Of a DNA stretch of 64,000 nt, positions 12,176 through 62,717 are shown piece by piece. Position 1 is the stretch's first letter, and each line of letters begins with the position of its first letter. The notes beneath the pieces are model-generated. The model ran no database searches. It was not told the origin of the DNA and saw only the letters and a list, made by a program, of their open reading frames with translations. The DNA comes from Octopus sinensis (Eukaryota). The stretch is taken from NCBI RefSeq assembly GCF_006345805.1, contig NC_043022.1, positions 24,056,001 to 24,120,000 of the forward strand, written 5' to 3'. Made by a program: the position numbers and the translations under genes.

Positions 12176-13004
12176 CTATCTAGAATGAGCCTCAGGATCC
12201 GTAGAGCTAGAATGGCTATCTCGTTTGTCTTTCAACTCATTTGCACTGTCTAATGGACTATTTGCCTTTGATTTTGAACTGGCGGGAGAGTTTGTATGAC
12301 TGCGAGGATGTGATGTAGTCGATGAGGGAATCAGAGGGGGTGGGGCCCCTGGTATACTCGCTGGGGAGTTACTCTTACTAGAATGGTTGACCATAGGACT
12401 GACGGTGCGGGGGAAATGTCCGACCGACAACGGATCAACGGCTCTCAATGCCGGCAGTTTGTTTTGCTCGTACTCGTAGCGTTCTCGTTCAAAGAACGGC
12501 ATGCGTTCAAACATCCGTTCTCTTAGATAAAGGTCTCGCATGTGTTCGCGCTCTCGCTCGCGTTCAATATCTCGTAAGTCTAATCGGTGATGCGCAACAT
12601 CGAAACCTTTCTCGTAGTGACTCCAAACCCCGAGCTGTGGACGTTCGTTACTGAAATATCGTGGTCCAATCATGCGTGCCCTTTCCAGCATGTTGACAGG
12701 CATGGTGGCTGCAGTATGGGATAGGGGGCCAAACAAATACTCGTTACTTCGTAACAGTTTATCGCGTTCGAGTAGTTGAGCCTCTTCCTCTCGGCGTTCC
12801 TCTTTGATCTTTATGCTGACCTTCTCTTCGTGGCGTTTATCAACCACCTCAGCTTTGGCTGCTTCAAGCCGACCGTTTCTTATCGGGGAACGAGATCGGG
12901 ATCGCGACCGACGTCTTTCTGCTTCTCTGTATCTGTCGCTTCGATCCTTCTCCCTACCACGGTCAATATCAAGACTGGTTAACCTCTCGAGGTTTCTTCT
13001 TTCT
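12176..13004 (-). CDS. AUTS2: AUTS2-like terminal coding exon (RS/RE-rich, IKIKEERRE, to stop), phase 2->stop
   Basis: Acceptor ttactattttcag|A within the 284-aa ORF. IKIKEERREE resembles vertebrate VKVKEERKED. The joined CDS is 4320 nt, a multiple of 3. Confidence 0.92.
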
Positions 13005-13087
13005 CTGAAAATAGTAAAAGAAAAACACATTTAGAAGCAAAACCAGAAGGGTTGATATTAGAACAATTTTAAATAGCAAACATTTCA

Positions 13088-13460: not shown

Positions 13461-14201
13461 TATGAAACAAACTACTAGCCTTTCTTGACTACTCCAGAAG
13501 GTAATTAACAGTGACAGGGATTTAAGTATAAAATCATACAACAGCTAACAATCTTGTTGATTCTGTTGGAACAATCTCTTGTAACAGGTAACAAGAGCCA
13601 ATGAGGGAGCCCTACAAGGTCTCACAAGTTGCTAGAAATAGAAACTACATCCTACTTCCGAGAAAAAAAGGATATATTGGATGTGGTCATATTTACAATA
13701 TTATGTCTGAAAACTAAATGACAAGATGGTCATGGCTAAGACCTTTCAGTATAGGTCTGCTGGGTCAAAATTGACCAAAGGCTAAACAACAATATCTATA
13801 ACCATTAATACAGATCATTTAATATTCCTCATCCATGCTGGCAATGGGTTGGATGGTTTGACAGGAGCTTGCAAGCCATAGGACTGCACCAAGCTCCAAT
13901 GTCTAATTCTCCACAATTTACAGAGTGGACTGGGTGCTTTGTACATGGCATCAGAACTGGTGAGGTCTAGCACCACTCAAAACTTAGAAAATTTTTTTTC
14001 TAATTTCTAGAGCATAAACCTAATTACACACTGTCTGTTTGCTTCTGTGTTGATAAATTATTTTGCACCATACATTACATGGGTAAAATAAAAGAAACAG
14101 CCAGAACTGGGATGTCTTTGATTAGGGTCGACCAAGATCAAAGCAGTTAGGGGTCACTAACAGGAAGGTCATGGCCGGAACCAAAGAGCAAATCTACGTA
14201 C

Positions 14202-14391
14202 CGTTCACGTTCTTCTTCTTTCCTTCTGTCATGCAGACTCAGCTCCCTCTCCCGCTCCTTCTCCCGTTCATCGGTTTTGGGCCACGTTGGCGGAGTAGGG
14301 AAAGATGAAGGTGTCTTGTGTAAGCGGTTCCATTCTGGAGACAGTGTTGACATGCTGGACAGTTCTCTGGCACCATTAAATAAACTATTTC
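14202..14391 (-). CDS. AUTS2: AUTS2-like exon GNSLFNGARELSSMSTLSPEWNRLHKTPSSFPTPPTW...EEERER, phase 1->2
   Basis: Acceptor ctttgtgtcttgcag|GA, donor CG|gtacgt. WNRLHKTPSSFPTPP matches the family motif WNRLHRTPPSFPTPP. Confidence 0.93.
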
Positions 14392-15199
14392 CTGCAAGAC
14401 ACAAAGAGAACGGGTTAAAGATTTAGAAGTCTTTAGAATACAAGCAAAAAATAGGGATTCAGTCAGAAATGTGATGACATTAAGATCATTGGGGGGGGAC
14501 ACACACACAGAAGGAGACTTTAAGGGGGTCCACCAACCGTCAATATCTCTGTTTATATATATTATCATCTGACGCCATGATAGATTGTGGTGGGAGGAGA
14601 GGAGAGTGGTAGGGAAGGTGGTGATGATGGGATAGGGGGCAGACAGCGTAACAGAGAGAGAGAGAGACAATGATGATGTGGAAGGAGAGAGAGAAGTCAA
14701 AGGAGAGAGCAGCAGCATAGAGAGAAGGTGGAGGACTAACTGGTAAGAGAGAAGGGAGTACACGTAAGTGCTACTCAAAAGCTGTGTATATATAATATAT
14801 AAGTGATAGGTATAAAATCATACAACAGCTAACAATCTTGTTGATTCTGTTGGAACAATCTCTTGTAACAGGTAACAAGAGCCAATGAGGGAGCCCTACA
14901 AGGTCTCACAAGTTGCTAGAAATAGAAACTACATCCTACTTCCAAGAAAAAAGGATATATTGGATGTGGTCTTATTTACAATATTATGTCTGAAAACTAA
15001 ATGACAAGATGGTCACGGCTAAGACCTTTCAGTATAGGTCTGCTGGGTCAAAATTGACCAAAGGCTAAACAACAATATCTATAACCATTCATACGTAATG
15101 TGTGATTACTGGATTGTAGAGAAAGGTAAATTCAGCATAAGGTAGAGGGGACAGGTTTCACAAGGTAAACTGTTGACGTTTAAAGTAAGTAGTTCTTAC

Positions 15200-15253
15200 C
15201 TAGACCAGGGAAGCCAACACTGTACGGAGATGGCCGTGCAAATGGTGATACAC
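15200..15253 (-). CDS. AUTS2: AUTS2-like 54-nt exon GVSPFARPSPYSVGFPGL, phase 1->1
   Basis: Acceptor ttttttgcttgtatttcag|GT, donor CTAG|gtaaga. PFARPS resembles vertebrate PFNRPS. Confidence 0.88.
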   Translation of the reverse strand: MYHHLHGHLRTVLASLV

Positions 15254-16566
15254 CTGAAATACAAGCAAAAAATAGGGATTCAGTCAGAAATTTGATGACA
15301 TTAAGATTACTGGGGGCAGGAGACTTTAAGGGGGTCCGCCAACCGTCAATATCTCTGTTGATATATATTATCATCTGATGCCATGATAGATCGTTAGCCA
15401 CTACACACATTTTTTTCTCTCCTTGTTTTTTCTGTGTCCCTTTCTGTAGAAGAGCATAGGCTCGAAACGTTATACTAATACAGCTGTTTGTTTTGTACAC
15501 CACCTGTCTTCGTCTTTTGTTTTTTTTTCATAAACTGTCCCTATATTTTATCATCTGTATGTTTGTATGACAGTACATTCAATAATGTCACACACGACAA
15601 TAGATACAATATATTATACACACACAACAGTAGACAGAGTATATTACACACATACGTGAGAGTACATACAGTGCCTCACACACACATACAGAAAAATACA
15701 GGCATGCCTCAACTTAGGTCATCTCAAGTTGTGTCTTTCTCGACTTCACATTGGTTTTTTTTCTTTCTTAAAAAAAATGACTAGAAAGAAATAAACCTCA
15801 ACTTGAGTCAATCTATCTGACTTTAACATCAGTATCAAGTAAACATATTTAAAAACATAGAAATTCAAAAAGAACCTAAAACCCAACACTGAAGTAGAAA
15901 ATCAAATAAAACACGTGTAAATCATTTAAAACACACATAAGGCAAATCACCATCATTTAATGTTCGCCTTCCATGTTAGAACGGGTTGGACAGTTTGACA
16001 GGAGTCAGCCAGGTGGGAGATTGCACTAGGCTTTGGTATAGTTTTTACAGTTAAATGCCCTTCCTAATACTAACCACCTTGCTGAGTGGACTCAGTGCTT
16101 TTTACGTGGCACCAGCACAGGAGAGGTCGGTTTCGGCATAGTTTTTACAGCTGGATGCCTTTCCAAATGCCAAACACTTCACAGTGTGGTCTGGATGCTT
16201 CTTACGTGGCACCTGCAGAGTCACCAAATAACTTGCAAGACAAGGAATCCTTGAGAGGGGGACAGGGAATCTTGTGCCAGATGATGAAAGGTTAGGGTGT
16301 TACATTGTTTTTCAAGTCAAGTCAAATTTTTTGGAACTGATTCTGATGTAAGTTGAGGTGTCCCTGTATAAACAATATCTCACTCATACACACGCAACAG
16401 TAGATTTGAATCAGTGAGACCCTAAGGACCTTACCTATATGAGCTGGGTTTAAAAAGCTGCTGTGGTGTGTGGGCCCTGAATCAAATGGAGGTCTTGTAG
16501 ATCCTGAAACGAAACAGAATATATAATAATGAGTGTTTATTTATTCACATTGTTTCAAATTAATCA

Positions 16567-16866
<300 letters not shown>

Positions 16867-17789
16867 CTAGAATAGAAAAAATACAGAACAAGATGAATTA
16901 CATCAAGATCATTAACATCATCATCAATATATATATATATACATTAGTTTCAAATTTTGGCACAAGGCCAGCAATTTCGGGGGAGGTGTTAAGTCGATAA
17001 CTTCGACCCCAGGACCCAACTGGTATTTATTTTATTGACTCTGAAAGGATGAAAGGCAAAGTTGATCTCAGCAGCATTTGAACTCGGAATGTAAAGCCAG
17101 ATGAAATGTTGCTAAGTATTATGCCTGGTGTGCTAATGATTCTGCCAGCTTGCCGCATTCATCAATATATACATGTTGTTAGTTATTCCATCAAGTCAGT
17201 TTAGTCATTGGACGGTTTGACAGGAGTCAGCCAGGTGGGAGGCTTTGGCATGGTTTTTACAGTTAGATGCCCTTCCTAATACTAACCACCTTGCAGAGTG
17301 AACTCAGAGCTTACGTGGCACCAACACAGGAGAGGTCAGTTTCGGCATAGTTTTTACAGCTGGATGCCCTTCCAAATGCCAAACACTTCACAGTGTGGCC
17401 TGGATGCTTCTCATGTGGCACCTGCAGAGTCACCAAATAACTTGCAAGACAAGGAATCCTTGAGAGGGGGACAGGGCATCTTGTGCCAGATGATGAAAGG
17501 TTAGATGATAGCTTAAAGCATGATGTGTTAAGTGTAGTATTGATATTAGGTGTGAGTGTGTGTGTCGATATATCTTCTGAGCTGGTTGCTTGTGCACATG
17601 CACACACGTTTTGTAATTAGCACCTGCACGATAAAATAAAGGGGAAGGCAGCTGAGCAACAATCATGTAGTTATTAGTTTATTATGGAATTTAATGTTGT
17701 CGGTTACTCATATAAGAGCTTGAAAAAGTAAAAGACCCACAGTGGGGGTGGGCATGGCTGGAGATGAAGTGAAAAGGGTATGTAGTTAC

Positions 17790-17879
17790 CTTTGGTGTCA
17801 CTGGAGAAGGACCAGGTTTCACACGTTCTCGAAGAGACAGTAAAGCTGGGTCAGATGATATACCCCCAGGATTGATGGT
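17790..17879 (-). CDS. AUTS2: AUTS2-like 90-nt exon TINPGGISSDPALLSLRERVKPGPSPVTPK, phase 0->0
   Basis: Acceptor ttgtctccacag|ACC, donor AAG|gtaact. In frame, and sits where vertebrate TSNP...PMLR lies between GAFQPK and KPGKW. Confidence 0.8.
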
Positions 17880-19124
17880 CTGTGGAGACAATGGTGACAT
17901 TTAAAAACATGTTGAGTTATGACACAGAGCTGGGGTGGATGACATAATTGTAGTAATAGCAAGCAGAAAGGGTGGTGGTGGAAGATAACAGCTGTGGCAT
18001 GTGATGGAAAGACAGGTATGACATGATTGTACAGGTAGTAAGAGACTGTAAATGGAGGATGACAGATGTGCTTGTGTGATTGTAAGGATAGTAAATATTA
18101 ACATAATTGTATGGGAGTAGATGCAGGTGGGTGAGGGGGGGGCAGGTGTGGTATGCGAGAGTAAAGTTTGTTAATGGGGAGGAGACAACAGGTGTGGCAA
18201 GCTCTCATTCTATACCATAGAGAAGTACAAAGCAACTCATTAACACCATATAGTTAATTAGGTAATCTTGATCTCCAACTTAATGAGGAGGTTGTGTTAG
18301 AACACAGAGTACTGCTTCGTTTACCTTGAGAGGATCTCTCATAAGGTTTCATGAGAATTCTCTGCTGTGGCCACTGGAACTGTCAGATCATGTAATTTCA
18401 CCCTGCTGTGGGTTTCTCAGTGACAGATATCCAGCAGCAGATAACAGCTGAATCTCCCTTCAGCGATATACAAAATCTCGGTGTCTACTCGAGCAAATAG
18501 CTAGAGGGTGTATTAAAAAAATAATTAATAGTGAAAGAAACAGAATACTATTAATAAATACCCAAAGGTTAAATTGGAAGTCAAGATTACCTTTTGCTAT
18601 TAATACTGCTCTTCTGTTGCTTTGAATAATTTAATTACGGTTTTGTTAGACCCTGTTTTGCTAATTTCAAATCCTCCCACTAGTTTTGGTCATGTTACTC
18701 CCACACACTTATACACATACAGAAGCAAATGATCCCTATTATGCACCCTATGTCTAATTATGAATTTTAGATCTTCCACTACTACTACTGCAGTCACCAC
18801 CACGCTTGTAATTATTATCACTAACATAACATGTTAACATTACCACTAACCCCTCCACCACCACCATTACCATAAACGACAAACACTTTAATTAACATCA
18901 TTACTGTTACCCCACCTCCTCATATTGCTACTGCAGCTCGTCTCAATAAACAACCTACCACCATCAACCCTAGAATTATCCTCTCCCTTACTACAACAAC
19001 CCCCTTTTCCTCTGCTAATTAACAGGCTGAAAGCCACCCCCTTTAATCCTATTAGTACAAAGATGATGATAGCTGCCAATATTGAGACATCAGTAGCTGG
19101 TAATCTAGTGATATTTAGCTGGTG

Positions 19125-19512
19125 GAGTATGTGTGAAAGACTGACCATGGTCCTTGGCTTGAGAGCACAAGGATGACCTCGTCTTCGTTCCAAGGATGTC
19201 TGCAAGAGTGATTGATACGAAGTCAAGAGATCAGGATGTCCTGAGATGGGAGGAGGTCGGAAATGATTGCCCACGCTGGAGGCAAGTACTCTATGCAAGG
19301 GGATCGAAATAATCATGGGGAAACTGGATCTTGCCAGCAAAGAAAAGCCCACTTGAAGAACAGAAAAGTGTAGAGAGCTTCTTCAAATGCAGCCGCTATG
19401 TGCAAAACTTCCACTGCTGCATGGGCTCGTATAGTCACAGTGGGTGCGGCACCACCGTCAGCAGCTGACACGAAATTCTCCAGGTTCAGACCCATGGTCT
19501 TTCAAGACCAAT
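19125..19512 (+). mobile_element. Decayed 3' end of an RTE-clade LINE
   Basis: Frameshifted translation G*PRLRSKDVCKSD...WEEVGNDCPRWRQ, then FKCSRY...GSYSH (C-terminal Cys/His motif) and CCATGGTCTTTCAAGAC. These are typical of RTE ORF2 ends (recalled). Confidence 0.7.
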
Positions 19513-19984
19513 GAATGCCTGTCTGTCTGTGTGTGTATGTGTTTATCATCCACATCATCATAGTTTAACATCCCCTTTTTTCCATGTCAGCTCTGAATGG
19601 TGGATGTTGAAAGCAATGACCAAACCCTCTCTTTACACTAAATGAATGGGGTTTTACTAGTTGTTGGGGATCACAGAGTTTGTATTGACAGTAAAAGAAC
19701 AGAGGGGGAGAAAAGGGAGGAATCTGTTATGCCACTTAATATTTGAACAATAATAATCATAATGATGATGATAATCCTTTCTAACATAGGGCACAAGGCC
19801 TCAAATTCGGGAGAGAGTTGGGGACTAGTTTATTGCATCGACCCCTGAAAGGATGAAAGATGAAATTGACTAAAATAATAATAATAATAATGGTAATATA
19901 TTTGTTGTGCAAGATTTTTTATGTGAAATTGTGTGTTGAAACAGATATTGTTGTATTTAGGAATGGCCAAAATAAGATTAAGAT

Positions 19985-20190
19985 TCTCTTTTACTCTTTT
20001 CAGTCATTTGACTGCGGCCATGCTGGAGCACCACCTTTAATCGAGCAACTCGACCCCGGGACTTATTCTTTTGTAAGCCCAGTACTTATTCTATCAGTCT
20101 CTTTTGCCAAACCGCTAAGTAACGGGGACATAAACACACCAGCATCGGTTGTCAAGCGATGCTAGTGAGACAAACACAGACATACAAACG

Positions 20191-20232
<42 letters not shown>

Positions 20233-20403
20233 CATATATATGACGGGCTTCTTTCAGTTTCCATCTACCAAATCCACTCACAAGGCTTTGGTTGGCCTGA
20301 GGCTATAGTAGAAGACACTTGCCCAAGGTGCCACGCAGTGGGACTGAACCGGGAACCATGTGGTTGGTAAGCAAGCTACTTACCACACAGCCACTCCTGC
20401 GCC
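19985..20403 (-). mobile_element. SINE family A, full length
   Basis: Complete head-to-tail match to the other copies. Confidence 0.88.
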
Positions 20404-20561
20404 TATCAATGTAAAAAATAAATAACGCTGAAACAAAGTAACACCAAATATATATAGTGTGCGTGTTTTTATTGGCTAAACTGGCAAAATGACCATTCCT
20501 AAATACAAAAATTATGGTAATAAATGTAGGGAAATAAAAGCAAGAAATATAGAAGAATTAC

Positions 20562-20660
20562 TTTAGGTTGAAAAGCCCCAGGTATGCCAGAATTTAAGGG
20601 GGCAGTTCCTGGAGCAGCTGGGGTCAGCAGTGAGGGTAAAGCATAACTGAGTCCCGGAAT
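20562..20660 (-). CDS. AUTS2: AUTS2-like 99-nt exon IPGLSYALPSLLTPAAPGTAPLNSGIPGAFQPK, phase 0->0
   Basis: Acceptor cgttccacag|ATT, donor AAA|gtaatt. Ends in the family motif GAFQPK. Confidence 0.92.
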
Positions 20661-20740
20661 CTGTGGAACGATAGAAGAAATTTTTATTAGTTTGGTTGGT
20701 TTAGCATTCAAATGAAGTTATGGTTATACATACATACATA

Positions 20741-21148
20741 TACTCTTTACTCTCTTTTACTTGTTTCAGTCAGTTGACTGCGGCCATGCTGGTGCACCAC
20801 CTTTAGTCAAGCAACTCGATGCAGGACTTATTCTTTGTAAGCCCAGTACTTATTCTATTGTCTCTTTTGCCGAACCGCTAGGTTACGGGGACATAAACAC
20901 ACCAGCATCGGTTGTCAAGCAATGCTAGGGGGACAAACACAGACACACAAACATACATACACACATATATATATATATATATACATACATATATACGACA
21001 GGCTTCTTTCAGTTTCCGTCTAACAAATCCACTCACAAGGCTTTGGTTGGCCCGAGGCTATAGTAGAAGACACTTGCCCAAGGTGCCACGCAGTGGGACT
21101 GAACCTGGAACCATGTGGTTGGTAAGCAAGCTACTTACCACACAGTCA
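20741..21148 (-). mobile_element. SINE family A, near full length
   Basis: Same consensus; fills most of the intron between exons 21292 and 20660. Confidence 0.88.
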
Positions 21149-21291
21149 TATTTACACACACGCAAACACAGCTACATACACAAACATGTGTATGTCTTGC
21201 CACACACACACACACACACACACACACACCATGTCCACACTACAGTCATAGCAATAACAGTTGCAAATGTTGAAAAGAGTGAATAACTTAC

Positions 21292-21336
21292 TCCTTGGCG
21301 GTAGAATGAGGGCTCATATCGGGGGATTTTCTCAAA
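21292..21336 (-). CDS. AUTS2: AUTS2-like 45-nt exon FEKIPRYEPSFYRQG, phase 0->0
   Basis: Acceptor atttttacttgcag|TTT, donor GGA|gtaagt. Equivalent to vertebrate FDKYPTKVDPFYRHS (recalled). Confidence 0.9.
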
Positions 21337-22792: not shown

Positions 22793-23001
22793 CAGGTGCT
22801 GCGCATTGTTGGGCAGTAGAGAAGGTGAGAATGGAGGGGTGCTTAGACCAATCGTGTGTTGGTGTGTGTGTTGATGTTGATGCATATGTTGATGTTGGTG
22901 TTGGTGCATCTCTGTCCTCATGTAGGAGGCCGGTCCGAGCGGAGCGGTTCGGTCATGGGCCAACAACCGGTTGCTCACTTCACGTTGCAAATAGTCAGCA
23001 T
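22793..23001 (-). CDS. AUTS2: AUTS2-like HX-repeat exon ([48 protein letters not shown]...), phase 1->0
   Basis: Acceptor ttgttctctcatag|AT, donor CTG|gtaagt. Strong resemblance to the AUTS2 signature DILRQELNTRFLA...[28 protein letters not shown] (recalled). Confidence 0.95.
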
Positions 23002-25808: not shown

Positions 25809-25809
<1 letters not shown>

Positions 25810-25862
<53 letters not shown>

Positions 25863-25935
25863 GTGTGTGTATATATATATATGTGTATGTATATATGTGT
25901 ATGTATGTATGTGTGTGTATGTATGTGTGTGTATG

Positions 25936-25966
<31 letters not shown>

Positions 25967-26045
25967 GTATATATATGTGTGTGTATATATATGTATATGT
26001 ATGTATGTGTATGTATGTGTATATGTATGTGTATGTATGTGTATA
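25810..26045. repeat. Compound (TA)n/(TG)n microsatellite
   Basis: Direct reading. Confidence 0.95.
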
Positions 26046-27881
26046 CTGGTGCAACCTCCCAACCTGGCAGCTCTGGTCATCCCATGCCGTAATAGGAAAC
26101 AGGCATTAAAGGATAGCTATGATGAAACACGTGTACCACATATGAACATCTTTGTCTTGTGTGAGTTGCTGGTGTCTCACAAAAAAGGCAGAAAGCGTCC
26201 AGTACACTTTGTAAAGTGGTGTGCATTAGAAAGAGCCTCCAGCCATAGGAACCATGCCAAAGTAGAGACTGGATCTCAACACAGTCCCCACCAGCTTGCT
26301 GGATCCTGTCAAACAGTTCGACATGGCAAAAATGATAATAGTTACTCTTTTACTTGTTTCAGTCATTTGACTGTAGCCATGCTGGAGCACCGCCTTTTGT
26401 CGAGCAAATTGACCCCAGGACTTATTCTTTGTAAGCCTAGTACTTATTCTATCGGTCGCTTTTGCCAAACCGCCAAGTTACAGAGACGTAAACACACCAG
26501 CATCGGTTGTCAAGTGATGTTAGGGGGACAAACACACACAAACATATACACATATATATATATACATATATACGACGGGCTTCTTTCAGTTTCCGTCTAC
26601 CAAATCCACTCACACGGCTTTGGTCGGCCCGAGGCTATAGTAGGAGACACTTGTACACACACACATATACACATATTATATATATACACATACATACACA
26701 CACATATATATGAACTGTTACTATGTAGTATTGATAGGTACAAGAACAAATTGTGGTTGACATAATATTAGTGTATGATAGAGAGCGAGAGAAAGGAAGG
26801 GGTATAGTGATGATAGTAAAGATGATGATGGCTACACATGCTTTATCATCAAGAAGCATTATGTATATAAAAATGATGATTTAGTGTTTGTAAGTATAAA
26901 GTGGATGGTGGTGGAGTGGAAACTGCAGTGGACACGCAGCGGCAGCTGCACGATTACCAGCAACCTGTAGTGATGAATGTTTCCCCAGCAATGGAAGCAG
27001 TCGATGGGGAGGGGAAGGGACAGAGAAAGGGACAGGGTAGAAAGGTAGTCAACCAGCCAGTTAGGAATCGCAATACCACAGTGAACTGACTGGACGACCG
27101 TCTGCGAGCAAGAAGAATTTTTTACGGGAATCGCGCGGCGCCAAGCGAAACCAAATCAAATGAAACGATAAATAAGGAGATGCTGATGGTAACTACTAAT
27201 TAGTGCTACTACATGAAAAAAGCCAAACCAATACACTGCTACATCAGTGGTAGAATCACGCAAAAGAAAAACAAAATAATCTCGATAAGAATTCAAAAGC
27301 AAAAAAAATTGAAACAACAAAACAGAACACCACCATCACTGCAACCCCCATCCTCTATCCCAGTGGCAAATCCCTAGAGATGCAATGGTAAGTAAGGAGT
27401 GAGTGGGTCAGAAGAATCGGTGGAGCATTGGGCAAGGTGGGGACAGTCAATTAGCGGAATCGGTGGAGCATCATCGAGGTGTGTCATGGGCTGTAGGACT
27501 CATAAAGCCATAGTTTGACCCTGTTTCCATGGTGTACGAGGAATTGAGATTAAAACTCTAGCCCCTAATTGAGACACCGGTCTGTTGCAGGGTTAACTCA
27601 CCAGCTATAGCGGGAACACAGTTACAGCTGATTGGACTGGAGCAATGTGTGACGAAGTGCTTTTGCTCAAAAACACAACATGCCGCCTGGTTTGGGAATT
27701 GAAACCATGATCATGAGTGCAACATCCTTAACCACTAGGCCAAACAACTTCACACACACACAAATTTTACAGCTTAATTCTGTCCCTCTACATCTGAAGT
27801 CTGAATCTTACAGAGGGTAATTTAACCGTTTATCTTCTCTAGTTCTCAACCAAGGTCCATATGGCTCTTTATCTCTCCAGA

Positions 27882-31100: not shown

Positions 31101-34100
31101 ACTTTTTCTTTGAAAGGGTGTCTGGGTAAGAGGGGATCAAAACCTATGCAAGTGAGGGATGTCAACCAACTCGACAAGCCGATCTGGCCCTCAACGTTTA
31201 TAGAAGGCAGATAATATTGAATAGAGAGGATGAAAGACAGATACATTGCACGTGAGACAGAAGGGGAGAGAGAGGGACGGAGGGGGGATGTTAGCTTTAA
31301 CTTTAGAAATTTTCTGTACCAAACGGGTGGTTGATGGGCAGTCGGTGGGGGTTCTTAAGAGTTTCTGAAAGGGTCATTAAAAAAGAAACAGGGCCTGTAG
31401 GAGTGGATGGGGTGGGATAGAGGAAGGTATCAAGACGAATCAAGGAAAAATAAGAATCGATAAATAGTAGTAGTAGAAGTAGTAGTAATAATAATAACAC
31501 GCAAATAAATTATGCAAGAAATCAAGACTATTAGTGGAGAAAAATTGAAAATGTATATATATATATACATATATATAGGTAATATATATATATATGTATA
31601 TATAAAATAAAGAGGAAAAAACTAAACAAAGGGAAGCTGTCAAAAATGCGAAGGTGAAACAGAAGAGGTTTAATTGCAAAGTAGTTAGTGAAAAAGGTAA
31701 AGTAGCAAAAAGCTTTTGGTCAGAGAATGGTAAAAAGGTTGTAGCAAGAAAGGTATGAGCCTAAGCTAAGAACAAGCTGCTTGCTGGCAACAAAAGCTCT
31801 TTTCAAACGAAGCCATGTTGTTGACAGAAAAGATTTTGAAACGTACGTAAGTATGGACTAATAACAGACGGACAGAGACCGCCAGGAAAATCCAAATGCT
31901 CGCACTGCTTCGATGTTGGAGGAGGGCGAGCTAGAAAAAGAAAAACACAGGCGTTAACTTATTCCACACTTTGCCCCATCTCGCAAGAACGACTTAAAAC
32001 CCAAAGGAAACTTTCAAGAAAAAAATCAAGGTAAAAAAAAAAATAATAATAATAATAATTTAAAAAAAAACAACCCCAAACAAAAGCCACTTCCCACTGA
32101 CAAAAAATTGAAATAAATAAAATAAAATAAAAATAGTTAAAATAAATTAATCTTGCTACAATAGTTTATTAATACTGAAAAGGATAAACAGGTTACTAAC
32201 GAGTCATTAGATATTTAACAGATTTCTCATAATTTTTTTATAAAGGAGGGAGGATAGTCTTTTTTCCTCTCCCTTGTGAATTTCAGTTTCATTCCATTTC
32301 ATTCCCAGGCGAAATGGCAGGCCTTAATTGACAAAGTGAAGGAATAATTAAAAATTAAGGAAAAAATATGATATCATTAACAAAAACACTAATGAAGTAC
32401 TTCAATATCTCATCAACAGTTTTTTTTTAATCACCACTCATGTGGTTTGGTATTTTGTAACTGACTTGCAATCTATTGACTGCGGGTTCAAACTGAGTGA
32501 TTGTTACATAGTTCCTCGCTTCATTCCAGCCAGAATGCTTGTGTGTGTGTGTGTGTGTGTTTCTTAATTGGCAGCTCATTGTTATGGATACCAGAAATAA
32601 GTATCAACTATGTAAGAACAATCATAAGGGTTAAGGAAACAATTTGACTTCATTTTAGGGTTTTTTTTCTCCCACATTTTTCTTGTGGAGTAGAGACTGT
32701 GTGTGTGTGTGTGTGTGTGTGTGTGGAACAACAAAGAAAAATACAATTGTTTGAATGTGATATCATTCTGCTTCTTGAATCGTTAACAAGGAAGCAAGAC
32801 GGAACGTATGAGATAGTTTAAAAGGCCATTTATAGATATATTCAGCAACTTAATAAATTAAAAACAGGTGCAAGTGAGGAAAGGCCAAAAAAAAAAGAAA
32901 AAAAAAGGGGGGGGCCAATTTATATGGAAGAATGGATTCTGTTAGGATTTCTGTATAAACAGCGATTTATCGATGGTCATGTAAATTTACTGGAACGTAA
33001 AATGATCTGAGCCGATTTACACGTTAACAGTTACACGCAGCAGCCTTGTGCAACTGCGGAGTGTTTATATAGCAGCGATGTAGCACTTCGGGGAAAACTG
33101 ATAACAGATCTTTGATTGTGTGCCAGCTGGCAGTTTTGAATTCGAGAGTGAGGGATGGTTGGTGATATGGTGAGGGAACACTGACAACTGGACCATGTCT
33201 CGATAATGGACAGCTCCGATACTTTCTATTGACCGACTGCAAGCCAACAGAATTAAGACAACCGTAGTTTGGTCTGTCTCTTACTATCACTTTCGTTATC
33301 ATATTTCTGGTGAAATACACAGCCTTTGTTTCAACAAATTTAGAACATAAAATTACTGTGAAATTTTGATGGAAAATTTAAATCAGATAAATTTAAAGCA
33401 GGAAATTTGCAACATTGCACCAAAGGCAGTTTCAGGGCAGGTTCGTAGCAAAAGGATTAACTGATTACTCAGTGATAGTAGCATTGACCTGTTTGTCTTG
33501 ACAAATAACAGAACGGTGTTAAGTTCAGTCAGTGATTGGTAGAACAACATTTGCAGTGGTGTGTGTGTGTGTTTGTACATTCTTGATCAATTACCATATG
33601 TTGTCTAATTGATCAGACCCATGAGTGGTTCAGCCATTACCATCCAATCTTTTTTTACTAGCAACTAGGAGTTCCAGTATTATTTATAGTAGAGGATCTC
33701 AACTGGGGTCCATATAAGATTTTGTTGTTAAGAATTAGGCGCAGTAAATTTGTTATATTTCTACAATGCATAAAATATTTTAATAATTCTTTTTTATACA
33801 ATTACTAATAATATTTAATTATAAAAATATACTGGGATTTTTTAAACACTGAATGTCTGTAGAGGATGGGGGGGGGGGTCCACTTGAGTGGAAGAAAAAT
33901 CAAAAGGGTCCATAGATAAAAAACTGGTTGAGAACCACCGATTTAAAGAGTGTCTTTCTCATTTTGTTTTTAATAGATGGTAAGGGACAATTTAAGGGAG
34001 ATTTGACTGTGACTGCAATTTCTAGTGGGCTGAACAATTCTGAAGGAGCACCCTTTGTAGGCTCAAGCCCCACCATAGACCATCTAGAAGACACCTTCAC

Positions 34101-37231: not shown

Positions 37232-37466
37232 TTTAAAGTGGCAACTTGAGCAGAGAACACACTTCATCTAGGCTATTTCTGAAGATGACTGAGAACCAAC
37301 TGGGCTGAATGTAAAATGCTTTGATTACCCACGTCAAGTATGTAATTGTTTATTAGATTAATTGATTACTTAATAGAGTCGCTGGCTGTGGGGGTGTAAT
37401 GTGTAATCGACAGAAAAAGCCAGAAGGCAGAATAGAAACAGCTGGGAAAATTAAAGTGGTACTTAC

Positions 37467-37750
37467 TTGCTTGGAAAGACATAGAATCTGCAAAATGGCT
37501 CTGCACATTGGCCGGGACTTGCAAGGCAGTAGAGGTTAGAGTTGGTGGTGGAGGTAGAGGAGATGCAAACATACTGTGAGTGGCGGGGTGTGCCGTGGTA
37601 GAGTGGTGTGGGTGGAGAGTTGGCGGCGGCGGCGGGGCAGCCGGGTGATGAGAGAATGATGCCGGATGCGTATGCAGCGAGTTCAATGGGAGGTGTAAGT
37701 TACCAGCCGCAATCGGAATCGGGGAGGAGTATAACTGTGCAGCCGTTGGA
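37467..37750 (-). CDS. AUTS2: AUTS2-like exon (PTAAQLYSSP...HSMFASPLPPPPTLTSTALQVPANVQSHFADSMSFQA), phase 2->1
   Basis: Acceptor tttcgtctctttcag|T, donor GCAA|gtaagt. MFASPLPPPPTLTSTALQV matches vertebrate [21 protein letters not shown] (recalled). Confidence 0.9.
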
Positions 37751-37960: not shown

Positions 37961-38356
37961 ACTCTCTTTTACTCTTTTACTTGTTTCAGTCATTTGACTG
38001 CAGCCATGCTGGAGCACCGCCTTTGGTCGAGCAACTCGACCCCGGGACTTATTCTTTGTAAGCCCAGTACTTATTCTATCGGTCTCTTTTGCCGAACCGC
38101 TAAGTGACGGGGACATAAACACACCAGCATCGGTTGTCAAGCAATGCTATGGGGAGAAACACAAACACACACACATATATATATATACATATATATGATG
38201 GGTTTCTTTCAGTTTCCGTCTACCAAATCCACTCACAAGGCTTTGGTCGGCCCGAGGCTATAGTAGAAGACACTTGCCCAAGGTGCCACGCAGTGGGACT
38301 GAACCCGTAACCATGTGGTTAGTAAGCAAGCTACTTACCACACAGCCACTCCTGCG
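37961..38356 (-). mobile_element. SINE family A, full length
   Basis: Complete copy, inverted relative to 36735-37125. Confidence 0.88.
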
Positions 38357-38711
38357 GATGTTCGTTTTTACATATTTTAGGCTGTCACTTACTGTGCAAC
38401 CAGTCCAGGTCTTAGAATTACAAGTACAATCCGTCTTATGGGCTTCCACATAGTTTCCATCTCAGGCTTGAGTCAAACTAGAGGCTATGAGAAAAGACAT
38501 CTACACACACGCCCCATCCAAAATTGACATGAAAAGGAATTACACGGCATGTAACTATTTCTCATGTCAACGGATCCAAATGAGTTGAGCATGGCAGCTC
38601 GAGCGAGATGCACCTGAGCAAGAGAGGCTGGAGTGTGATAGGCCAGCATCAACGAGACACGCAGCTAAAGTGTACTGAGCTACATGGTACAGTAGTTAGC
38701 TTCCTTTCTCA

Positions 38712-39022
38712 ATGTACCTGAATAAGACGGGCCCGAGTGTGATGGGCCTGAATGAGATGAGCCCGAATGAGATGGCCCCGAGTGAGACGGGCCTGAATGA
38801 GAAGTTCCTACGTAGGAAGGGCCAGAATGGGAAGAGCCCGACTGAGATAGCCCCGAATGAGATGAGCCAGAGTGGGAGGAGCCAGAGTGAGAGGAGCCAG
38901 AGTGTAATGGACCGTGTGGGAAGGTCCCGAATGCGATGGACCTGAATGAGAAGGTCCTGAATGTGATGGACCAGAGTGGGAGGGTCCCGAGTGCGTGGGT
39001 GCCGAGTGTGGCAGAGCAGAGT
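38712..39022 (-). pseudogene. Intronic 311-bp copy of AUTS2 exon segment 39710-40021 (HSGPS array) with a 1-bp deletion
   Basis: Nearly base-for-base identical; GGACCGGTGTG is GGACCGTGTG in the copy. Confidence 0.85.
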
Positions 39023-39138: not shown

Positions 39139-41401
39139 CTAGTCCATCCGACAGAGCTCTTGGAAATGTACGGCAACGTTTCTTTCTCTTTTGTGAGGAC
39201 AGGATCGTCTCGGCGTGGAAGTGCTCTGGGAGAGGGCGGCGTTCGTTTTGGGGCTTCACGAACTATAGGCGGCACTGGTGGTGGTGGTGGCGGCGGTTGC
39301 TGTTGAATTGATGAAGCAGCTTTTGACTGGGGGGAGGGACTCTTCAGATGGGGAGAAGGAGACAAGATAACTGAGGGGGCTGGAGGAAGGGGAGGTGGAG
39401 GTGGTAGAGGAGGCTTTGATGGCGGAGTTGGAGGTGTTGGCCCATTGACTGACAGTGATGGCAAGGGCGGAGTGTTGCTAGGGTGAGCAAGGTTGGAGGT
39501 GTGGTGGGTCAAAGAGGAACTAGGATAAGAACTAAGAGAATTAGAAAGAGGATGCACGGAGTGTGGGTGGGCAGAATGAGGGTGAGTGTGACTTGAGTGA
39601 ACAGAGTGGGAGTGGGATGAATGAGAAGTTGAATGGGTAGTAGTTATGTGAAGTGTTGAGTGAGATGGACCCAAGTGAGTTGAGCCCGGGTGCGACGAGC
39701 TCGAGTGAGATGTGCCTGAATGAGACGGGCCCGAGTGTGATGGGCCTGAATGAGATGAGCCCGAATGAGATGGCCCCGAGTGAGACGGGCCTGAATGAGA
39801 AGTTCCTACGTAGGAAGGGCCAGAATGGGAAGAGCCCGACTGAGATAGCCCCGAATGAGATGAGCCAGAGTGGGAGGAGCCAGAGTGAGAGGAGCCAGAG
39901 TGTAATGGACCGGTGTGGGAAGGTCCCGAATGCGATGGACCTGAATGAGAAGGTCCTGAATGTGATGGACCAGAGTGGGAGGGTCCCGAGTGCGTGGGTG
40001 CCGAGTGTGGCAGAGCAGAGTGGGTGGGTCCCGAGTGTGGCAGAGCAGAGTGGGTGGGCCCCGAGTGTGGTAGACCAGAGAGGGAGGATCCTGAGTGTGA
40101 CGGACCAGAGTGGGTGGGTCCTGGGTGAGAAGGACCGGAGTGGGTTGGTCCCGAATGTGATGGACCAGAATGCGTGGGTCCCGAGTGTGAGGGACCAGAG
40201 TGGGAGGGTCCCGAGTGAGAAGGACCAGAGTGGGAGGACCCTGAGTGAGAAGGACCCGAGTGGGAAGGTCCTGAGTGTGATGGACCAGAGTGAGACGGTC
40301 CTGAGTGAGAAGGACCGGAGTGAGAGGACCCTGAATGAGAGGACCCTGAGTGTGATGGACCAGAGTGGGTGGGTCCCGAGTGTGAAAGAGCTGAATTTGA
40401 AAGGTTCGAGAAAGAGTGGGTTAAGTGGGCATGAGTGGAGTGTGGGATTGTATAGTGAGTTGAGTGTGGGTTGGAATAATGAGGCAGAGAGTTGTGTGGC
40501 AAGGAGTTGTGAGAGTTATGTGAGAGTGTGTTGTGTGACTGTGTGTTGTGAGATGGTGTGTTATGTGGCTGTGTGTTGTGTGACTGTGTGTTGTGGGGCT
40601 GTGTGTTGTGGGGTAGTGTGTTATGGGACTGTGTTATGTGAGGTTGTGTGTTGTGTGGTTGGTTGCTGTGATGTTGTGTGTTGTGGAGTTGTGTGGTATG
40701 TGCTTGGTTGCTGTGAGGCTGTGTGTTGTGTTGTGGGTTGTTGTGAGGCTGTGTGTTGTATGGCTGTGAGTTGTGTGACAGGGAGTTGTGAGGCAGTGAG
40801 CTGTGTGGCAACGAGTTGTGTTGTTGTTGTTGTTGCTGCTGTTGTTGTTGTATTGTACTGTGTGCTAAGTTGTGTGGCTGGGAATGGTTGGGCAGAGAGT
40901 TGTGAGCAACGGTGCCAGATGAGGCCGAGGACGAGAATGTCGGGTGGGGAAAAGTCGGTGGAAGAGCTGTGGTGGGAAATGTGTTTGTGTTGTTGTTATT
41001 GTTGCTGTTGTTGTTGTTAGAGTTGCTGGCGTTATGTGGCTGAGGTGTAGAGACCGAGGCAGATACACTGCAACTGGGAGAGTTAGAAGTCGTGCCGGGA
41101 CTTGCAGCAATCGCAGAGCTGCTTGTTAGAGTTGTTGGTGAGTTGGTTGCGTGGGCGATGACAGCTACAGTGGGCGTGGCAGTGATGCTGGTGGCGGGAT
41201 TACCAGCGGTCAACGGGCTGCGTGTGCTGAAAGTATTGGTAGTTGTAGCTGGCACTGCAGTCACGCAGTTGCCGCTAACGCGGTTACTGTTGCTACTACA
41301 ACTGCTACTGCAGGTACTGATAACCCCACATATGGTGGTGATTGTTGTAGTAGTAGTAGTAGTAGTTGTTGTAGTTGTGGTAGTGGCAAGGTTACAGTTT
41401 C
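39139..41401 (-). CDS. AUTS2: AUTS2-like giant low-complexity exon (2263 nt; poly-T, poly-N, poly-Q, HNTQP and HSGPS arrays, Pro-rich), phase 1->2
   Basis: Lies within the 790-aa ORF 39135-41507. Acceptor tttttgcag|GA, donor ACTAG|gtaagg. Phases fit both neighbouring exons. Confidence 0.85.
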
Positions 41402-41676
41402 CTGCAAAAATATAAAAAAAACACATTGTCATTAATAACATCATAAGGTGGTAAGCATACCAGTCAAAACACTTAGTGCATTTCATCATCATCATCATCA
41501 TCATCATGCTGCTGGATTGGGTTGGGCAGTTTGATCAGAGCTGGCAAGATGGGGAGCTGCACCAGACTCTAGTCTAACTTGGTATGGTTTCTACAGCTGG
41601 ATGCCCTTCCTAACGCCAACCCTTTACAGAATGTGCTGGGTGCTTTTACATGGCACCGCACGGGCGCTTTATATAT

Positions 41677-52405: not shown

Positions 52406-52452
<47 letters not shown>

Positions 52453-52605
52453 GCTTCTTTCAGTTTCCGTCTACCAAATCTACTCACAAGGCTTTGGTCG
52501 GCCCAAAGCTATAGTAGAAGACACTTACCCAAGGTGCCATGCAGTGGGACTGAACCCGGAACCATGTGGTTCGTAAGCAAGCTACTTACCACACAGCCAC
52601 TCCTA
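52176..52605 (-). mobile_element. SINE family A, full length
   Basis: Complete match to the consensus. Confidence 0.85.
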
Positions 52606-54495: not shown

Positions 54496-56300
54496 GAGAG
54501 AGGGCACTCAGAGAGCATAAATTTCTGCCAAGGCAACACCAACGTCCTCTCAATGATTAACCAGAGATGATTTTTAAAATATCAATCCCGAAATCGAATC
54601 AGTTTATGCTAGTCATGAGGCCAAATATCTCTGAAAGTTTCATCTGAATCCATCCAGTGGTCCATGAGATATCTTGTCCACAGACAAACAAACAAACACA
54701 ACTGAAAACAATACCACCGCCTGAGAACTATCAGTGATACTGAAGGGGATGTAGCTAGCAATAGCAATGGATCATGTGTGTGTATGTTTCTGTGAGAAGG
54801 TGCACGTACAATCATGGTGTTCTTGAGCAAAACACTTCATGCTGCTTTAGTCCACTCAGCTGGTAAAAATAACCTTGTGATGGAATAGCCTTCCCATCAG
54901 TGGGGGAATGTTCGCCTGTTTGCCTAGTTGGCGGGGTGGGGTGGGTTGGGGGGCAGCAGCATTTGAAAGCTACAACGATACGAAGCACATTGCAACCAGT
55001 GGTGTATAAGAACATCTGATAGTCTGGTTGATACCATGATGGATATATATATATATACATATATATATGCACATATATATATATACATATATATATACAC
55101 ATATATATATATACATGTATATATATATACACACGTATATATATATACACACGTATATATATATATACACACGTATATATATACACATATATATATACAT
55201 ATATATATACACACACATATATATATATAACACACACACATATATATATGTATGTGTGTGTGTGTGTGTCTGTGTTTGTCCCCCCACCAACATTGCTTGA
55301 CAACTGATGCTGGTGTGTTATGTCCCTGTAACTTAGTGGTTCGGCAAAAGAGGCTGATAGAACAAGTACTAGGCTTACAAAGAATAAGTCCTGGAGTCGA
55401 TATTTGCTCGACTAAAGACGGTGCTCCACCATGGCGGCAGTCAAATGACTGAAACAAGTAAAAGAGTAAAGAGAGAGAGGGCACTCAGAGAGCATAAATT
55501 TCTGCCAAGGCAACACCAACGTCCTCTCAATGATTAACCAGAGATGATTTTTAAAATATCAATCCCGAAATCGAATCAGTTTATGCTAGTCATGAGGCCA
55601 AATATCTCTGAAAGTTTCATCTGAATCCATCCAGTGGTCATGAGATATCTTGTCCACAGACAAACAAACAAACACAACTGAAAACAATACCACCGCCTGA
55701 GAACTATCAGTGATACTGAAGGGGATGTAGCTAGCAATAGCAATGGATCATGTGTGTGTATGTTTCTGTGAGAAGGTGCACGTACAATCATGGTTTCTTG
55801 AGCAAAACACTTCATGCTGCTTTAGTCCACTCAGCTGGTAAAAATAACCTTGTGATGGAATAGCCTTCCCATCAGTGGGGGAATGTTCGCCTGTTGCCTA
55901 GTTGGCGGGGTGGGGTGGGTTGGGGGGCAGCAGCATTTGAAAGCTACAACGATACGAAGCACATTGCAACCAGTGGTGTATAAGAACATCTGATAGTCTG
56001 GTTGATACCATGATGGATATATATATATACATATATATATGCACATATATATATATACATATATATATACACATATATATATACATGTATATATATACAC
56101 ACGTATATATATATACACACGTATATATATATACACACGTATATATATATATATACACACGTATATATATATACATATATATATACACACACATATATAT
56201 ATATATATACACACACATATATATATACACACATACATATATACATATATATACACATATATATATACATATATATATACACACACACACACATATATAT
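54250..56300. repeat. ~1 kb near-identical tandem duplication
   Basis: Offset ~978 bp; breakpoints lie inside (TA)/(CA) microsatellites. Confidence 0.92.
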
Positions 56301-62560: not shown

Positions 62561-62589
62561 CACACACACACACACAGTGTTGTGTGCAT

Positions 62590-62598
62590 GTGTGTGTG

Positions 62599-62644
<46 letters not shown>

Positions 62645-62682
62645 TTTATTTAAAAGCAGCAGAAAATTCAACAAAACCTGTC

Positions 62683-62717
<35 letters not shown>

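What the first reader, a model, noticed from the sequence alone, without database searches (positions are those of the whole stretch)
39663..40820. About 70 His-every-fifth-residue pentapeptides in an AUTS2-family protein
Seen: after a Gln run come ~24 HN(T/S)(Q/L)(P/S) units (40455-40820) and ~48 HSG(P/S)(S/T) units (39663-40382). All indels keep the frame and the codons are diversified. Known: vertebrate AUTS2 has only short HX repeats, implicated in P300 binding; that motif is separately retained in exon 22793-23001. I recall no such array in vertebrate AUTS2 or fly Tay. Inference: a lineage-specific pH- or metal-responsive condensate domain added to a neurodevelopmental chromatin regulator.
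Basis: partly seen in the sequence, partly recalled or inferred. Interest (0 to 1): 0.75.

Follow-up and report, generated by a model that had tools for sequence, protein, structure and literature searches.

The report
Expanded histidine pentapeptide array in AUTS2
One large exon of a cephalopod AUTS2-family gene encodes about 72 five-residue repeats that each start with histidine; the array is real, is conserved as protein, and is nearly absent from the same gene in two other animals, but its function is untested.

Summary
On the minus strand, one exon (about 41400-39139) holds about 24 HN(T/S)(Q/L)(P/S) units (40820-40443). It also holds exactly 48 HSG(P/S)(S/T) units with no indel (40382-39663), followed by a His-X tail.

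Downstream minus-strand exons carry the Pfam Auts2 domain (81 bits, cut-off 23) and the HQ/HT repeat.

In the 48-unit array, codon positions 1+2 are 85% identical between units. Third positions are at random level (0.335 against 0.349 expected). The peptide is therefore under purifying selection and the array is old. The 24-unit array is much less diversified (Thr is always ACA).

An orthologous spliced cDNA from a diverged cephalopod (RNA-seq contigs L002/L003) confirms the exon junction. It has only five H-S-x-x-S pentads, 89 residues where the window has 509. A more distant orthologue cDNA (L006) has His clusters but no array.

The array is thus a lineage-specific expansion of an ancestrally His-rich, disordered linker. 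The 445-residue tract has no D/E/K/R and 90 His.

The pH-, metal- or condensate-related role is plausible but untested. The lack of aromatic residues counts against simple self-coacervation. Similar His-pentad arrays occur in many unrelated predicted proteins. This is a new variant of a known kind, of moderate interest.

The parts
39139..41400 (-). Large coding exon of the AUTS2-family gene (about 2262 nt, 754 codons). In order it encodes an S/T/N-rich N-terminal part, a Q10 run, array A, array B, a His-X tail and a Pro-rich PR1-like part.
   Evidence: The acceptor is TTTTTGCAG|G at 41401/41400 and the donor is AG|GTAAGG at 39139/39138. These are the only strong acceptor-like site and the only GTRAG donor in the exon. 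The frame is open for 800 codons. The orthologous cDNA L002 is colinear with it.
40821..40850 (-). Gln run (Q10) immediately upstream of array A.
   Evidence: Translation.
40443..40820 (-). Array A: 24 pentads of the HN(T/S)(Q/L)(P/S) type plus two 3-residue units. The DNA is CA-rich and the codons are only weakly diversified.
   Evidence: TRF period 15/30.
39663..40382 (-). Array B: 48 pentads of HSG(P/S)(S/T) with no indel. The consensus unit is CAY TCN GGN CCN TCN, and third positions are randomised.
   Evidence: A weak 30-nt higher-order period is present. There is one recent local 30-60-nt duplication at 40082-40008.
39549..39662 (-). His-X / His-XX tail (HSTLHITTTHSTSHSSHSHSVHSSHTHPHSAHPHSVHP).
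39139..39485 (-). Pro-rich part, equivalent to the PR1 N-terminus, ending ...IVREAPKRTPPSPRALPRRDDPVLTKEKETLPYISKSSVGWT. It is conserved with the cephalopod orthologue cDNA.
   Evidence: Alignment.
37466..37750 (-). Next exon (boundaries approximate): S-PTAAQLYSSPIPIAAGNLHLPLNSLHTHPASFSHHPAAPPPPP...VPANVQSHFADSMSFQA. The previous exon ends with AG and this one begins with T; together they form a Ser codon, which keeps the frame.
   Evidence: L002 cDNA reads ...SSVGWTSPSAQQLYSS... across the same junction.
31848..31931 (-). Small exon (boundaries approximate): RPPPTSKQCEHLDFPGGLCPSVISPYL.
   Evidence: tblastn of L002 cDNA, 73% identity.
22793..23001 (-). HX-repeat exon: ...[68 protein letters not shown].
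14201..21336 (-). Seven further exons (approximate: 21336-21253, 20660-20556, 17880-17790, 16866-16651, 16504-16433, 15254-15201, 14392-14201). They encode the Auts2 domain.
   Evidence: Colinear tblastn hits of L002 cDNA with AG/GT borders. PF15336 scores 47.7, 52.6 and 81.1 bits.
12176..13006 (-). Last coding exon (RS/RE-rich, ending ...STDPEAHSR plus the stop codon).
38712..39022 (-). Copy of part of array B (39710-40021) in the intron. It is 99% identical and has a 1-bp deletion that breaks the frame. It is not part of the coding sequence.
   Evidence: A further 71% degenerate piece lies at 38572-38644.

Best explanation
The feature is a translated, intrinsically disordered histidine-pentad domain in the single AUTS2-family gene of a cephalopod (probably an octopod). 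It sits in the known hypervariable linker between the N-terminal domain and the Pro-rich/Tay-homology part, at the position of the N-terminus of PR1.

It arose by tandem expansion of 15-nt (partly 30-nt) coding units from a short ancestral H-S-x-x-S seed. Array B is old and is held by purifying selection on the peptide. Array A is younger.

The product is a roughly 445-residue tract that is uncharged and rich in Ser, Gly and Pro. Its only ionisable groups are about 90 imidazoles at a regular five-residue spacing.

Most likely mode of action (inferred, not shown): the tract is a multivalent, His-dependent interaction and localisation module. It would amplify what the short His motifs of AUTS2 proteins are thought to do: partner binding such as P300 at the HX repeat, and nuclear-body targeting by His tracts. 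Its net charge, and hence its interactions, would be tunable by small pH changes, by Zn2+/Cu2+ and possibly by Ser phosphorylation.
For: Shown:
- The array and its statistics.
- Canonical splice sites, with no competing internal sites.
- Frame continuity into the downstream AUTS2 exons.
- Auts2 domain at 81 bits against a cut-off of 23.
- Variation concentrated at third codon positions of the minus-strand frame: positions 1+2 are 0.85 identical and position 3 is 0.335 against 0.349 expected. Four-fold sites are 0.25-0.33 identical. dN is 0.12-0.2 while dS is saturated or above 1.
- The non-coding intronic copy already carries a frameshift at 99% identity, whereas 720 nt of exonic array carry none.
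- Orthologue cDNAs assembled from RNA-seq runs show the same exon junction. L002 and L003 cover the linker; L004 covers only downstream exons. The linker is 89 residues with 5 pentads against 509 residues in the window.
- A distant orthologue cDNA has His clusters but no array.
- The tract has 0 D/E/K/R/C/M/W, 90 His and 134 Ser.
- AlphaFold gives mean pLDDT 33.8 and no secondary structure.

From the literature:
- The region is the low-conservation, disordered linker of the family (PMC7732068).
- HX-repeat mutations disrupt P300 binding (PMC9008325; bioRxiv 10.1101/2021.03.30.437620).
- His tracts target proteins to nuclear speckles (PMC2644819).
- His deprotonation switches phase separation of GHGLY pentapeptides (PMC6884462).
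Against: - No RNA or protein evidence from the window's own species; inclusion of the array in the mRNA is inferred from selection and splice signals.
- No closer relatives could be retrieved, so the age and phylogenetic spread of the array are inferred.
- The species behind L002, L006 and L001 are unknown.
- The tract has no aromatic or Arg 'stickers' (1 Phe and 5 Tyr in 445 residues). Tyr is essential for coacervation of the squid-beak pentapeptides.
- The longest His run is 2, whereas speckle targeting was shown for runs of 5 or more.
- Similar His-pentad arrays occur in many unrelated predicted proteins: a teleost HMG-box protein with HMTQP, a goby protein with HSGQY x57 (84 His-His gaps of five), and a bacterial kinase with HSAPS. 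The form alone therefore does not imply a specific function.
Confidence: 0.55

Rival explanations
1. The tract is a tolerated low-complexity expansion. It would be a coding minisatellite that grew in a permissive disordered linker and now serves at most as a flexible spacer, with no His-specific function.
For: The linker is the least conserved part of the family. Such arrays are common in unrelated predicted proteins. Array A is CA-rich, microsatellite-like and little diversified. The Ser/Gly/Pro-rich composition is typical of spacers.
Against: In array B, specific residues are kept (H 45/48, S 43/48, G 44/48) while four-fold sites are fully randomised. That is more constraint than 'avoid stops' would need. 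There are no indels in 720 nt, although the intronic copy acquired one at 1% divergence.
Confidence: 0.25
2. The tract is a dedicated metal-binding or pH-sensing domain (a Zn2+/Cu2+/Ni2+ ligand array, as in histidine-rich glycoprotein). Binding metal or protons would itself be the function, not protein-protein multivalency.
For: There are 90 imidazoles at regular spacing and no competing charged residues. His is the only titratable group near neutral pH (established chemistry).
Against: Single His residues separated by four residues, without Cys/Asp/Glu partners, give only weak, non-specific sites. No metal-binding family was matched in Pfam. Nuclear pH is tightly buffered.
Confidence: 0.12
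3. The array is not part of the mature protein. It would be skipped, spliced at internal sites, or be partly an assembly artefact.
For: There is no transcript evidence from this species. A 99% identical 312-bp copy 1 kb away shows that the region is either recently rearranged or error-prone in assembly. The orthologue cDNA lacks the array, which could in principle reflect splicing.
Against: The codon-position pattern of variation requires translation in this frame. There is no internal GTRAG donor and no acceptor as good as the real one. The diversified units give unique k-mers, so collapse or expansion in assembly is unlikely. L002 and L003 read straight through a complex, non-repetitive linker sequence.
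Confidence: 0.06
4. The constraint acts on the RNA. The array would form a long imperfect duplex, for example as an ADAR editing substrate or a regulatory structure.
For: Array-B RNA folds at -213.5 kcal/mol against -187.1 +/- 5.0 for shuffles, z = -5.3. Pairing is through the GGNCC Gly-Pro codon cores.
Against: Variation is confined to third codon positions, not to compensatory pairs. A strong fold is expected of any tandem repeat with a palindromic core. Array A (C/A only) cannot pair with itself.
Confidence: 0.04

Closest known systems
AUTS2 HX (HQ/HT) repeat and H8 tract of vertebrate AUTS2
   Same: Same protein family. Both are His-periodic low-complexity motifs in disordered regions. The HX repeat itself is also present in this gene, in its own exon at 23001-22793.
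   Different: Vertebrate HX is 18 residues with period 2, and H8 is a homopolymer. Here there are about 72 units of period 5 (about 360 residues) at a different position, upstream of PR1. P300 binding and speckle targeting are documented or predicted only for the vertebrate motifs.
Squid-beak histidine-rich proteins (HBP-1/2), GHGLY/GHGxY pentapeptide repeats
   Same: Both are cephalopod proteins with tandem pentapeptides carrying one His per unit and an intrinsically disordered chain. In the HBPs, His deprotonation acts as a pH switch (PMC6884462).
   Different: HBPs are secreted structural proteins with few units. Tyr in each unit is essential for their coacervation. The AUTS2 array has no aromatic residue per unit and belongs to a nuclear-regulator family. 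There is no sequence homology.
Homopolymeric His tracts and His-rich domains that target nuclear speckles or transcriptional condensates (e.g. DYRK1A, cyclin T1)
   Same: Both are His-rich disordered segments in nuclear regulators (PMC2644819; the role of the DYRK1A and cyclin T1 His-rich domains is from my own knowledge).
   Different: Those are runs of 5 or more consecutive His. Here the longest run is 2, and His is diluted 1 in 5.
Histidine-rich glycoprotein GHHPH pentapeptide repeats
   Same: Both are tandem His/Pro/Gly pentapeptides thought to sense Zn2+ and pH (own knowledge, not tested here).
   Different: HRG has 2-3 His per unit and about 12 units, and it is a plasma protein.
Unrelated predicted proteins with H-x4 arrays found here (HMTQP in a Pampus argenteus HMG-box protein, HSGQY in a goby protein, HAGPT/S in a midge protein, HSAPS in a bacterial kinase)
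   Same: Same repeat form: a 15-nt coding period with one His per unit. Some have near-identical units (HSGPS..., HMTQP against HNTQP).
   Different: They have different host proteins and no shared ancestry, and nothing is known of their function. They show that this kind of repeat recurs.

Membership tests
AUTS2 family / ancestral AUTS2 precursor orthologue (Pfam PF15336) | Auts2 domain above Pfam's gathering score | tested here: met
   47.7 bits (exon 16866-16567), 52.6 bits (14422-14150) and 81.1 bits for the concatenated exons; the cut-off is 23.
AUTS2 family / ancestral AUTS2 precursor orthologue (Pfam PF15336) | Conserved HQ/HT (HX) repeat upstream of the domain | tested here: met
   [19 protein letters not shown] in the exon at 23001-22793. 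The same motif is in the orthologue cDNAs L002 and L006.
AUTS2 family / ancestral AUTS2 precursor orthologue (Pfam PF15336) | RS/RE-rich C-terminal exon with a conserved end | tested here: met
   42 homologues of the last exon; the end ...STDP(D/E)(A/T)HSR is shared.
AUTS2 family / ancestral AUTS2 precursor orthologue (Pfam PF15336) | The array exon belongs to the same transcript as the domain exons | tested here: inconclusive
   The splice phase fits. The orthologue cDNA joins the homologous exon to the same downstream exons. There is no RNA from the window's own species.
Squid-beak HBP-type phase-separating His pentapeptides (GHGxY) | An aromatic residue (Tyr) in the repeat unit, needed for coacervation | tested here: not met
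   5 Tyr and 1 Phe in 445 residues, and none in the consensus units. The requirement is from PMC6884462.
Squid-beak HBP-type phase-separating His pentapeptides (GHGxY) | pH-dependent liquid-liquid phase separation | not testable with these tools
   This needs the recombinant domain.
Nuclear-speckle-targeting His tracts | A run of 5 or more consecutive His | tested here: not met
   The longest run is HH. The criterion is from PMC2644819.
Pfam GETHR pentapeptide repeat (PF05671) | Score above the gathering threshold | tested here: not met
   14.0 bits against a cut-off of 22.4, E = 0.033.
Pentapeptide-repeat beta-helix proteins (A(D/N)LXX type) | A Pfam match or a predicted quadrilateral beta-helix | tested here: not met
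   No Pfam hit. The AlphaFold model has no secondary structure over the arrays and pLDDT about 30.

The most novel reading that the evidence does not exclude
In the octopod lineage a 5-unit His seed in AUTS2 was expanded about 15-fold into a selectively maintained, switchable scaffold. The switch could be pH or Zn2+, hierarchical Ser phosphorylation by the CK2 of the AUTS2-PRC1 complex (the S-x-x-S spacing fits priming), or A-to-I recoding of CAY His codons to Arg in the duplex-prone array RNA. The scaffold would change how AUTS2-Polycomb/P300 complexes assemble in cephalopod neurons, as a lineage-specific rewiring of a conserved neurodevelopmental regulator.
Probability: 0.1. Interest if true: 0.8.

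Novelty: new variant of a known kind. Interest (0 to 1): 0.45.

Why it matters
AUTS2 is a conserved neurodevelopmental chromatin regulator, and its short His motifs are already linked to partner binding and human disease. Here a five-unit His motif has been expanded about 15-fold and then held by purifying selection, in an animal lineage known for independent evolution of a complex brain.

This offers a natural experiment on what His-periodic disordered regions do in this family. It also gives a clean case for studying how coding minisatellites become constrained protein domains. If the tract turns out to be an inert spacer, it is simply one more low-complexity expansion.

Tried and rejected
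- Protein search with the whole exon and with X-masked flanks: 8000 low-complexity candidates and nothing significant. No orthologous exon was retrieved this way, and this is not evidence of absence.
- Exact look-up of the window ORF: not on record. The window's species seems absent from the collection; the best hit to the last exon is 79%.
- phmmer against 1.84 billion representatives: 1180 hits, and the 150 listed match only the arrays, in unrelated proteins; no AUTS2 orthologue among them.
- L001 (ENA contig carrying the 79% relative) covers only the last 18 kb of its contig, so its array-exon region was out of reach.
- L005, L007, L008 and L009 are genomic contigs holding only the 3' exons.
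- Pfam finds no family for the array exon; GETHR is below threshold.
- The plus-strand ORF 39653-41020 was rejected as a by-product of the repeat. Variation falls on third positions of the minus-strand frame only.
- tRNA scan of the window: none.
- Literature: no paper links AUTS2 with cephalopods, and the three papers that mention both AUTS2 and octopus are unrelated.
Full report
**1. What is in the sequence**

Reading the minus strand of 39400-41300 gives one frame that is open for 800 codons, 41534-39135.

After a Q10 run (40850-40821) come 24 five-residue units of the type HN(T/S)(Q/L)(P/S). With them are two three-residue units (HNS, HST). Together they span 40820-40443. A short irregular His-rich stretch follows.

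Next come exactly 48 units of HSG(P/S)(S/T) at 40382-39663, in one unbroken register. 45 of these start with His; one each starts with L, Q and Y. A His-X/His-XX tail ends at about 39549.

The exon has 99 His in 754 residues. In residues 193-637, 64 of 89 successive His-His gaps are exactly 5. Shuffles give a mean of 7.3 and a maximum of 18 in 20,000 trials. Tandem Repeats Finder sees a 15-nt period with 48.3 copies, plus 30/60/90-nt higher orders. The observation and its coordinates are therefore correct.

**2. Is it an exon of an AUTS2-family gene?**

The open frame is bounded by a strong acceptor (TTTTTTTTATATTTTTGCAG|G, 41401/41400) and a consensus donor (AG|GTAAGG, 39139/39138). Inside the exon there is no other GTRAG donor and no acceptor-like site of equal quality.

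The exon ends with two bases of a codon. The next exon starts after TTTCAG with one base, at about 37750. Together they give Ser and keep the frame into ...PTAAQLYSSPIPIAAGNLHLPLNSLHTHPASFSHHPAAPPPPP.

Further downstream on the same strand lie:
- The HX exon, with [19 protein letters not shown], at about 23001-22793.
- Exons that match Pfam Auts2 (PF15336) at 47.7, 52.6 and, concatenated, 81.1 bits against a cut-off of 23.
- A conserved RS/RE-rich last exon, 13006-12179.

**3. Evidence from a relative's mRNA**

The last-exon homologue P0002 lies on RNA-seq assemblies from several runs (L002, L003, L004). Frame 2 of L002 is a single 986-codon ORF. It is a spliced cDNA of the orthologue.

It maps colinearly onto twelve minus-strand exons of the window, each with AG/GT borders. 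It reads ...LPYHKSSVGWTSPSAQQLYSS... across exactly the junction predicted in the window.

The donor species is diverged. Its last exon is 76% identical to the window's. It groups at 89% with P0001, another relative whose four-fold sites against the window are saturated (0.35 identity) and whose introns do not align.

I take these two relatives to be decapodiform cephalopods and the window to be an octopod. It was not tested.

**4. Lineage specificity**

Two anchors are conserved between the window and the relative: FPT(T/A)(A/S)LP and S(V/I)NGP. Between them the window has 509 residues with 96 His. L002 has 89 residues with 8 His. These include just five in-register pentads: HTTIS, HSAYS, HSTYS, HSTLS and HSNST (CAY TCA nnn nnn TCN). 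L003 agrees with L002 at 99.8%.

A more distant orthologue cDNA (L006, 987 codons, 41% identity in the last exon) has His clusters in the equivalent linker (NHHHSHNHS, HHHHHH, HHRSGSHSHTPS) but no pentad array.

The linker was therefore already His-rich, and a short H-S-x-x-S seed existed in cephalopods. The roughly 72-unit array is a derived expansion on the window's lineage. The alternative, loss in both other lineages, is less parsimonious.

Three caveats apply:
- The species names are unknown.
- L002 starts inside the Asn run.
- An isoform lacking the array cannot be excluded formally, although the linker in L002 is complex sequence read straight through.

**5. Selection and age**

In array B the consensus unit is CAY TCN GGN CCN TCN. 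First and second positions are 44-47 of 48 conserved, while third positions are near uniform. Mean pairwise identity is 0.85 at positions 1+2 and 0.335 at position 3; 0.349 is expected from column frequencies.

Four-fold sites are 0.25-0.33 identical. That is as saturated as the window-against-relative comparison. Shift-register dN is 0.12-0.2, with dS above 1 or undefined. The 22 HSGPS units use 18 different 15-mers.

This pattern only makes sense if the minus-strand frame is translated and the peptide is under purifying selection. It also implies that most duplications are old. I therefore predict that array B is shared by related octopods and is not species-specific.

Slightly raised third-position identity at even lags (0.48, 0.42, 0.44) points to a 30-nt unit of expansion. 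Only one local 30-60-nt block (40082-40008) looks recent.

Array A differs. It is CA-rich, Thr is ACA in 14 of 14 units, and third-position identity is 0.55.

A natural control lies in the intron. A 312-bp copy of 39710-40021 sits at 38712-39022. It is 99% identical yet already carries a 1-bp deletion.

**6. Properties of the product**

Residues 193-637 contain no D, E, K, R, C, M or W. They have 1 Phe, 5 Tyr, 134 Ser, 90 His, 56 Pro and 44 Gly. His is thus the only ionisable side chain in 445 residues.

A single-sequence AlphaFold model has mean pLDDT 33.8 and no secondary structure over the arrays. This is consistent with disorder, though a single-sequence model is weak evidence.

Pfam finds nothing for the exon; the GETHR pentapeptide family scores 14 bits against a cut-off of 22.4.

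The family literature describes this position as the poorly conserved, disordered linker at the N-terminus of PR1 (PMC7732068).

**7. How it most likely works**

Shown: a translated, constrained, disordered His-pentad tract in an AUTS2 orthologue.

Inferred: it acts as a multivalent His-dependent interaction or localisation module. Three observations support this by analogy:
- In vertebrate AUTS2, mutations in the HX repeat disrupt P300 binding.
- The H8 tract of vertebrate AUTS2 is predicted to target speckles, as His tracts do generally.
- In GHGLY peptides, His deprotonation switches phase separation.

Because the tract's charge depends wholly on His, small pH shifts or Zn2+/Cu2+ would change it strongly.

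Three points count against a simple self-coacervating domain:
- The tract has no aromatic or Arg residues, and Tyr is essential in the squid-beak system.
- No His run is longer than 2.
- The Ser/Gly/Pro-rich composition is typical of soluble spacers.

The main rival is a largely neutral spacer expansion. The residue-specific conservation in array B argues against that.

**8. How unusual is it?**

A full phmmer scan of 1.84 billion representatives gave 1180 hits; the 150 best that were listed all match the array region. The ones examined are unrelated proteins carrying other H-x4 arrays:
- HMTQP in a Pampus argenteus HMG-box protein.
- HSGQY (57 exact units; 84 His-His gaps of five) in a goby protein.
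- HQFRS (75 exact units; 89 gaps of five) in an alga.
- HSGPSLSSVP decapeptides.
- HAGPT/S in a midge protein.
- HSAPS in a bacterial kinase.

The form is a recurrent product of 15-nt coding minisatellites. What is particular here is the host protein, the size, the evidence for selection, and the contrast with orthologues. I found no paper on AUTS2 in cephalopods.

**9. Verdict**

This is a new variant of a known kind (His-rich low-complexity repeats in AUTS2-family proteins) and of moderate interest.

Noticed in passing
window 38712-39022 (- strand) and 38572-38644: A 312-bp copy of array-B segment 39710-40021 lies in the intron. It is 99% identical (2 substitutions and a 1-bp deletion that shifts the frame) and sits about 120 bp below the exon's donor. 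After about 67 bp of unrelated sequence comes a 71%-identical degenerate piece matching exon 39667-39746. This is either a recent duplication or gene conversion on top of an older one, or an assembly error.
   Followed up: partly
window, 26 places, e.g. 38195-38350, 13091-13243, 20240-20395, 52446-52601: A SINE-like element of about 156 bp occurs as 26 copies or fragments at 74-95% identity, on both strands. Its translations recur among the spurious ORFs. ARAGORN calls no tRNA in the window. From memory it resembles the abundant octopus SINE; this was not tested.
   Followed up: partly
L002 nt 1259-1332 against L004; window about 22790-22715: The orthologue cDNAs differ by a 75-nt in-frame segment (AKLVPQAAWCKRSERPELNSAGSHS) directly after the HX exon. 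This is probably an alternative micro-exon or an alternative donor. Only a weak counterpart is seen in the window, just below the HX exon.
   Followed up: partly
window 39663-40382 (- strand RNA): Array-B RNA folds much better than dinucleotide shuffles (-213.5 against -187.1 kcal/mol, z = -5.3). The GGNCC Gly-Pro codon cores pair between units. This could matter for A-to-I editing in a cephalopod, but it is also expected of any repeat with a palindromic core.
   Followed up: partly
window 39653-41020 (+ strand): A 455-codon ORF lies antisense to the arrays. It is a mechanical by-product of a repeat without stop codons in that frame; variation falls on the minus-strand third positions.
   Followed up: yes
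window 41347-41384, 40988-41028 and 41483-41507 (- strand): The same exon begins with a run of about 14 Thr and contains an Asn-rich run (NSNNNNSNNNNNTN). The Asn run is also present, and longer, in the orthologue cDNA L002. An ATG x8 run lies just upstream of the acceptor, in the intron.
   Followed up: no
L001 10001-11230 (protein P0001): The database gene call for the relative's last exon reads through three TGA codons as Trp (code 4) and extends into intron sequence. This is an artefact of prokaryote-style gene calling on eukaryotic DNA.
   Followed up: yes
window 7700-10000, 25500-26100, 54800-56300 and 62500-63200: Long (TA)n/(CA)n-type microsatellite blocks give the many '[10 protein letters not shown]' ORFs on both strands.
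   Followed up: no
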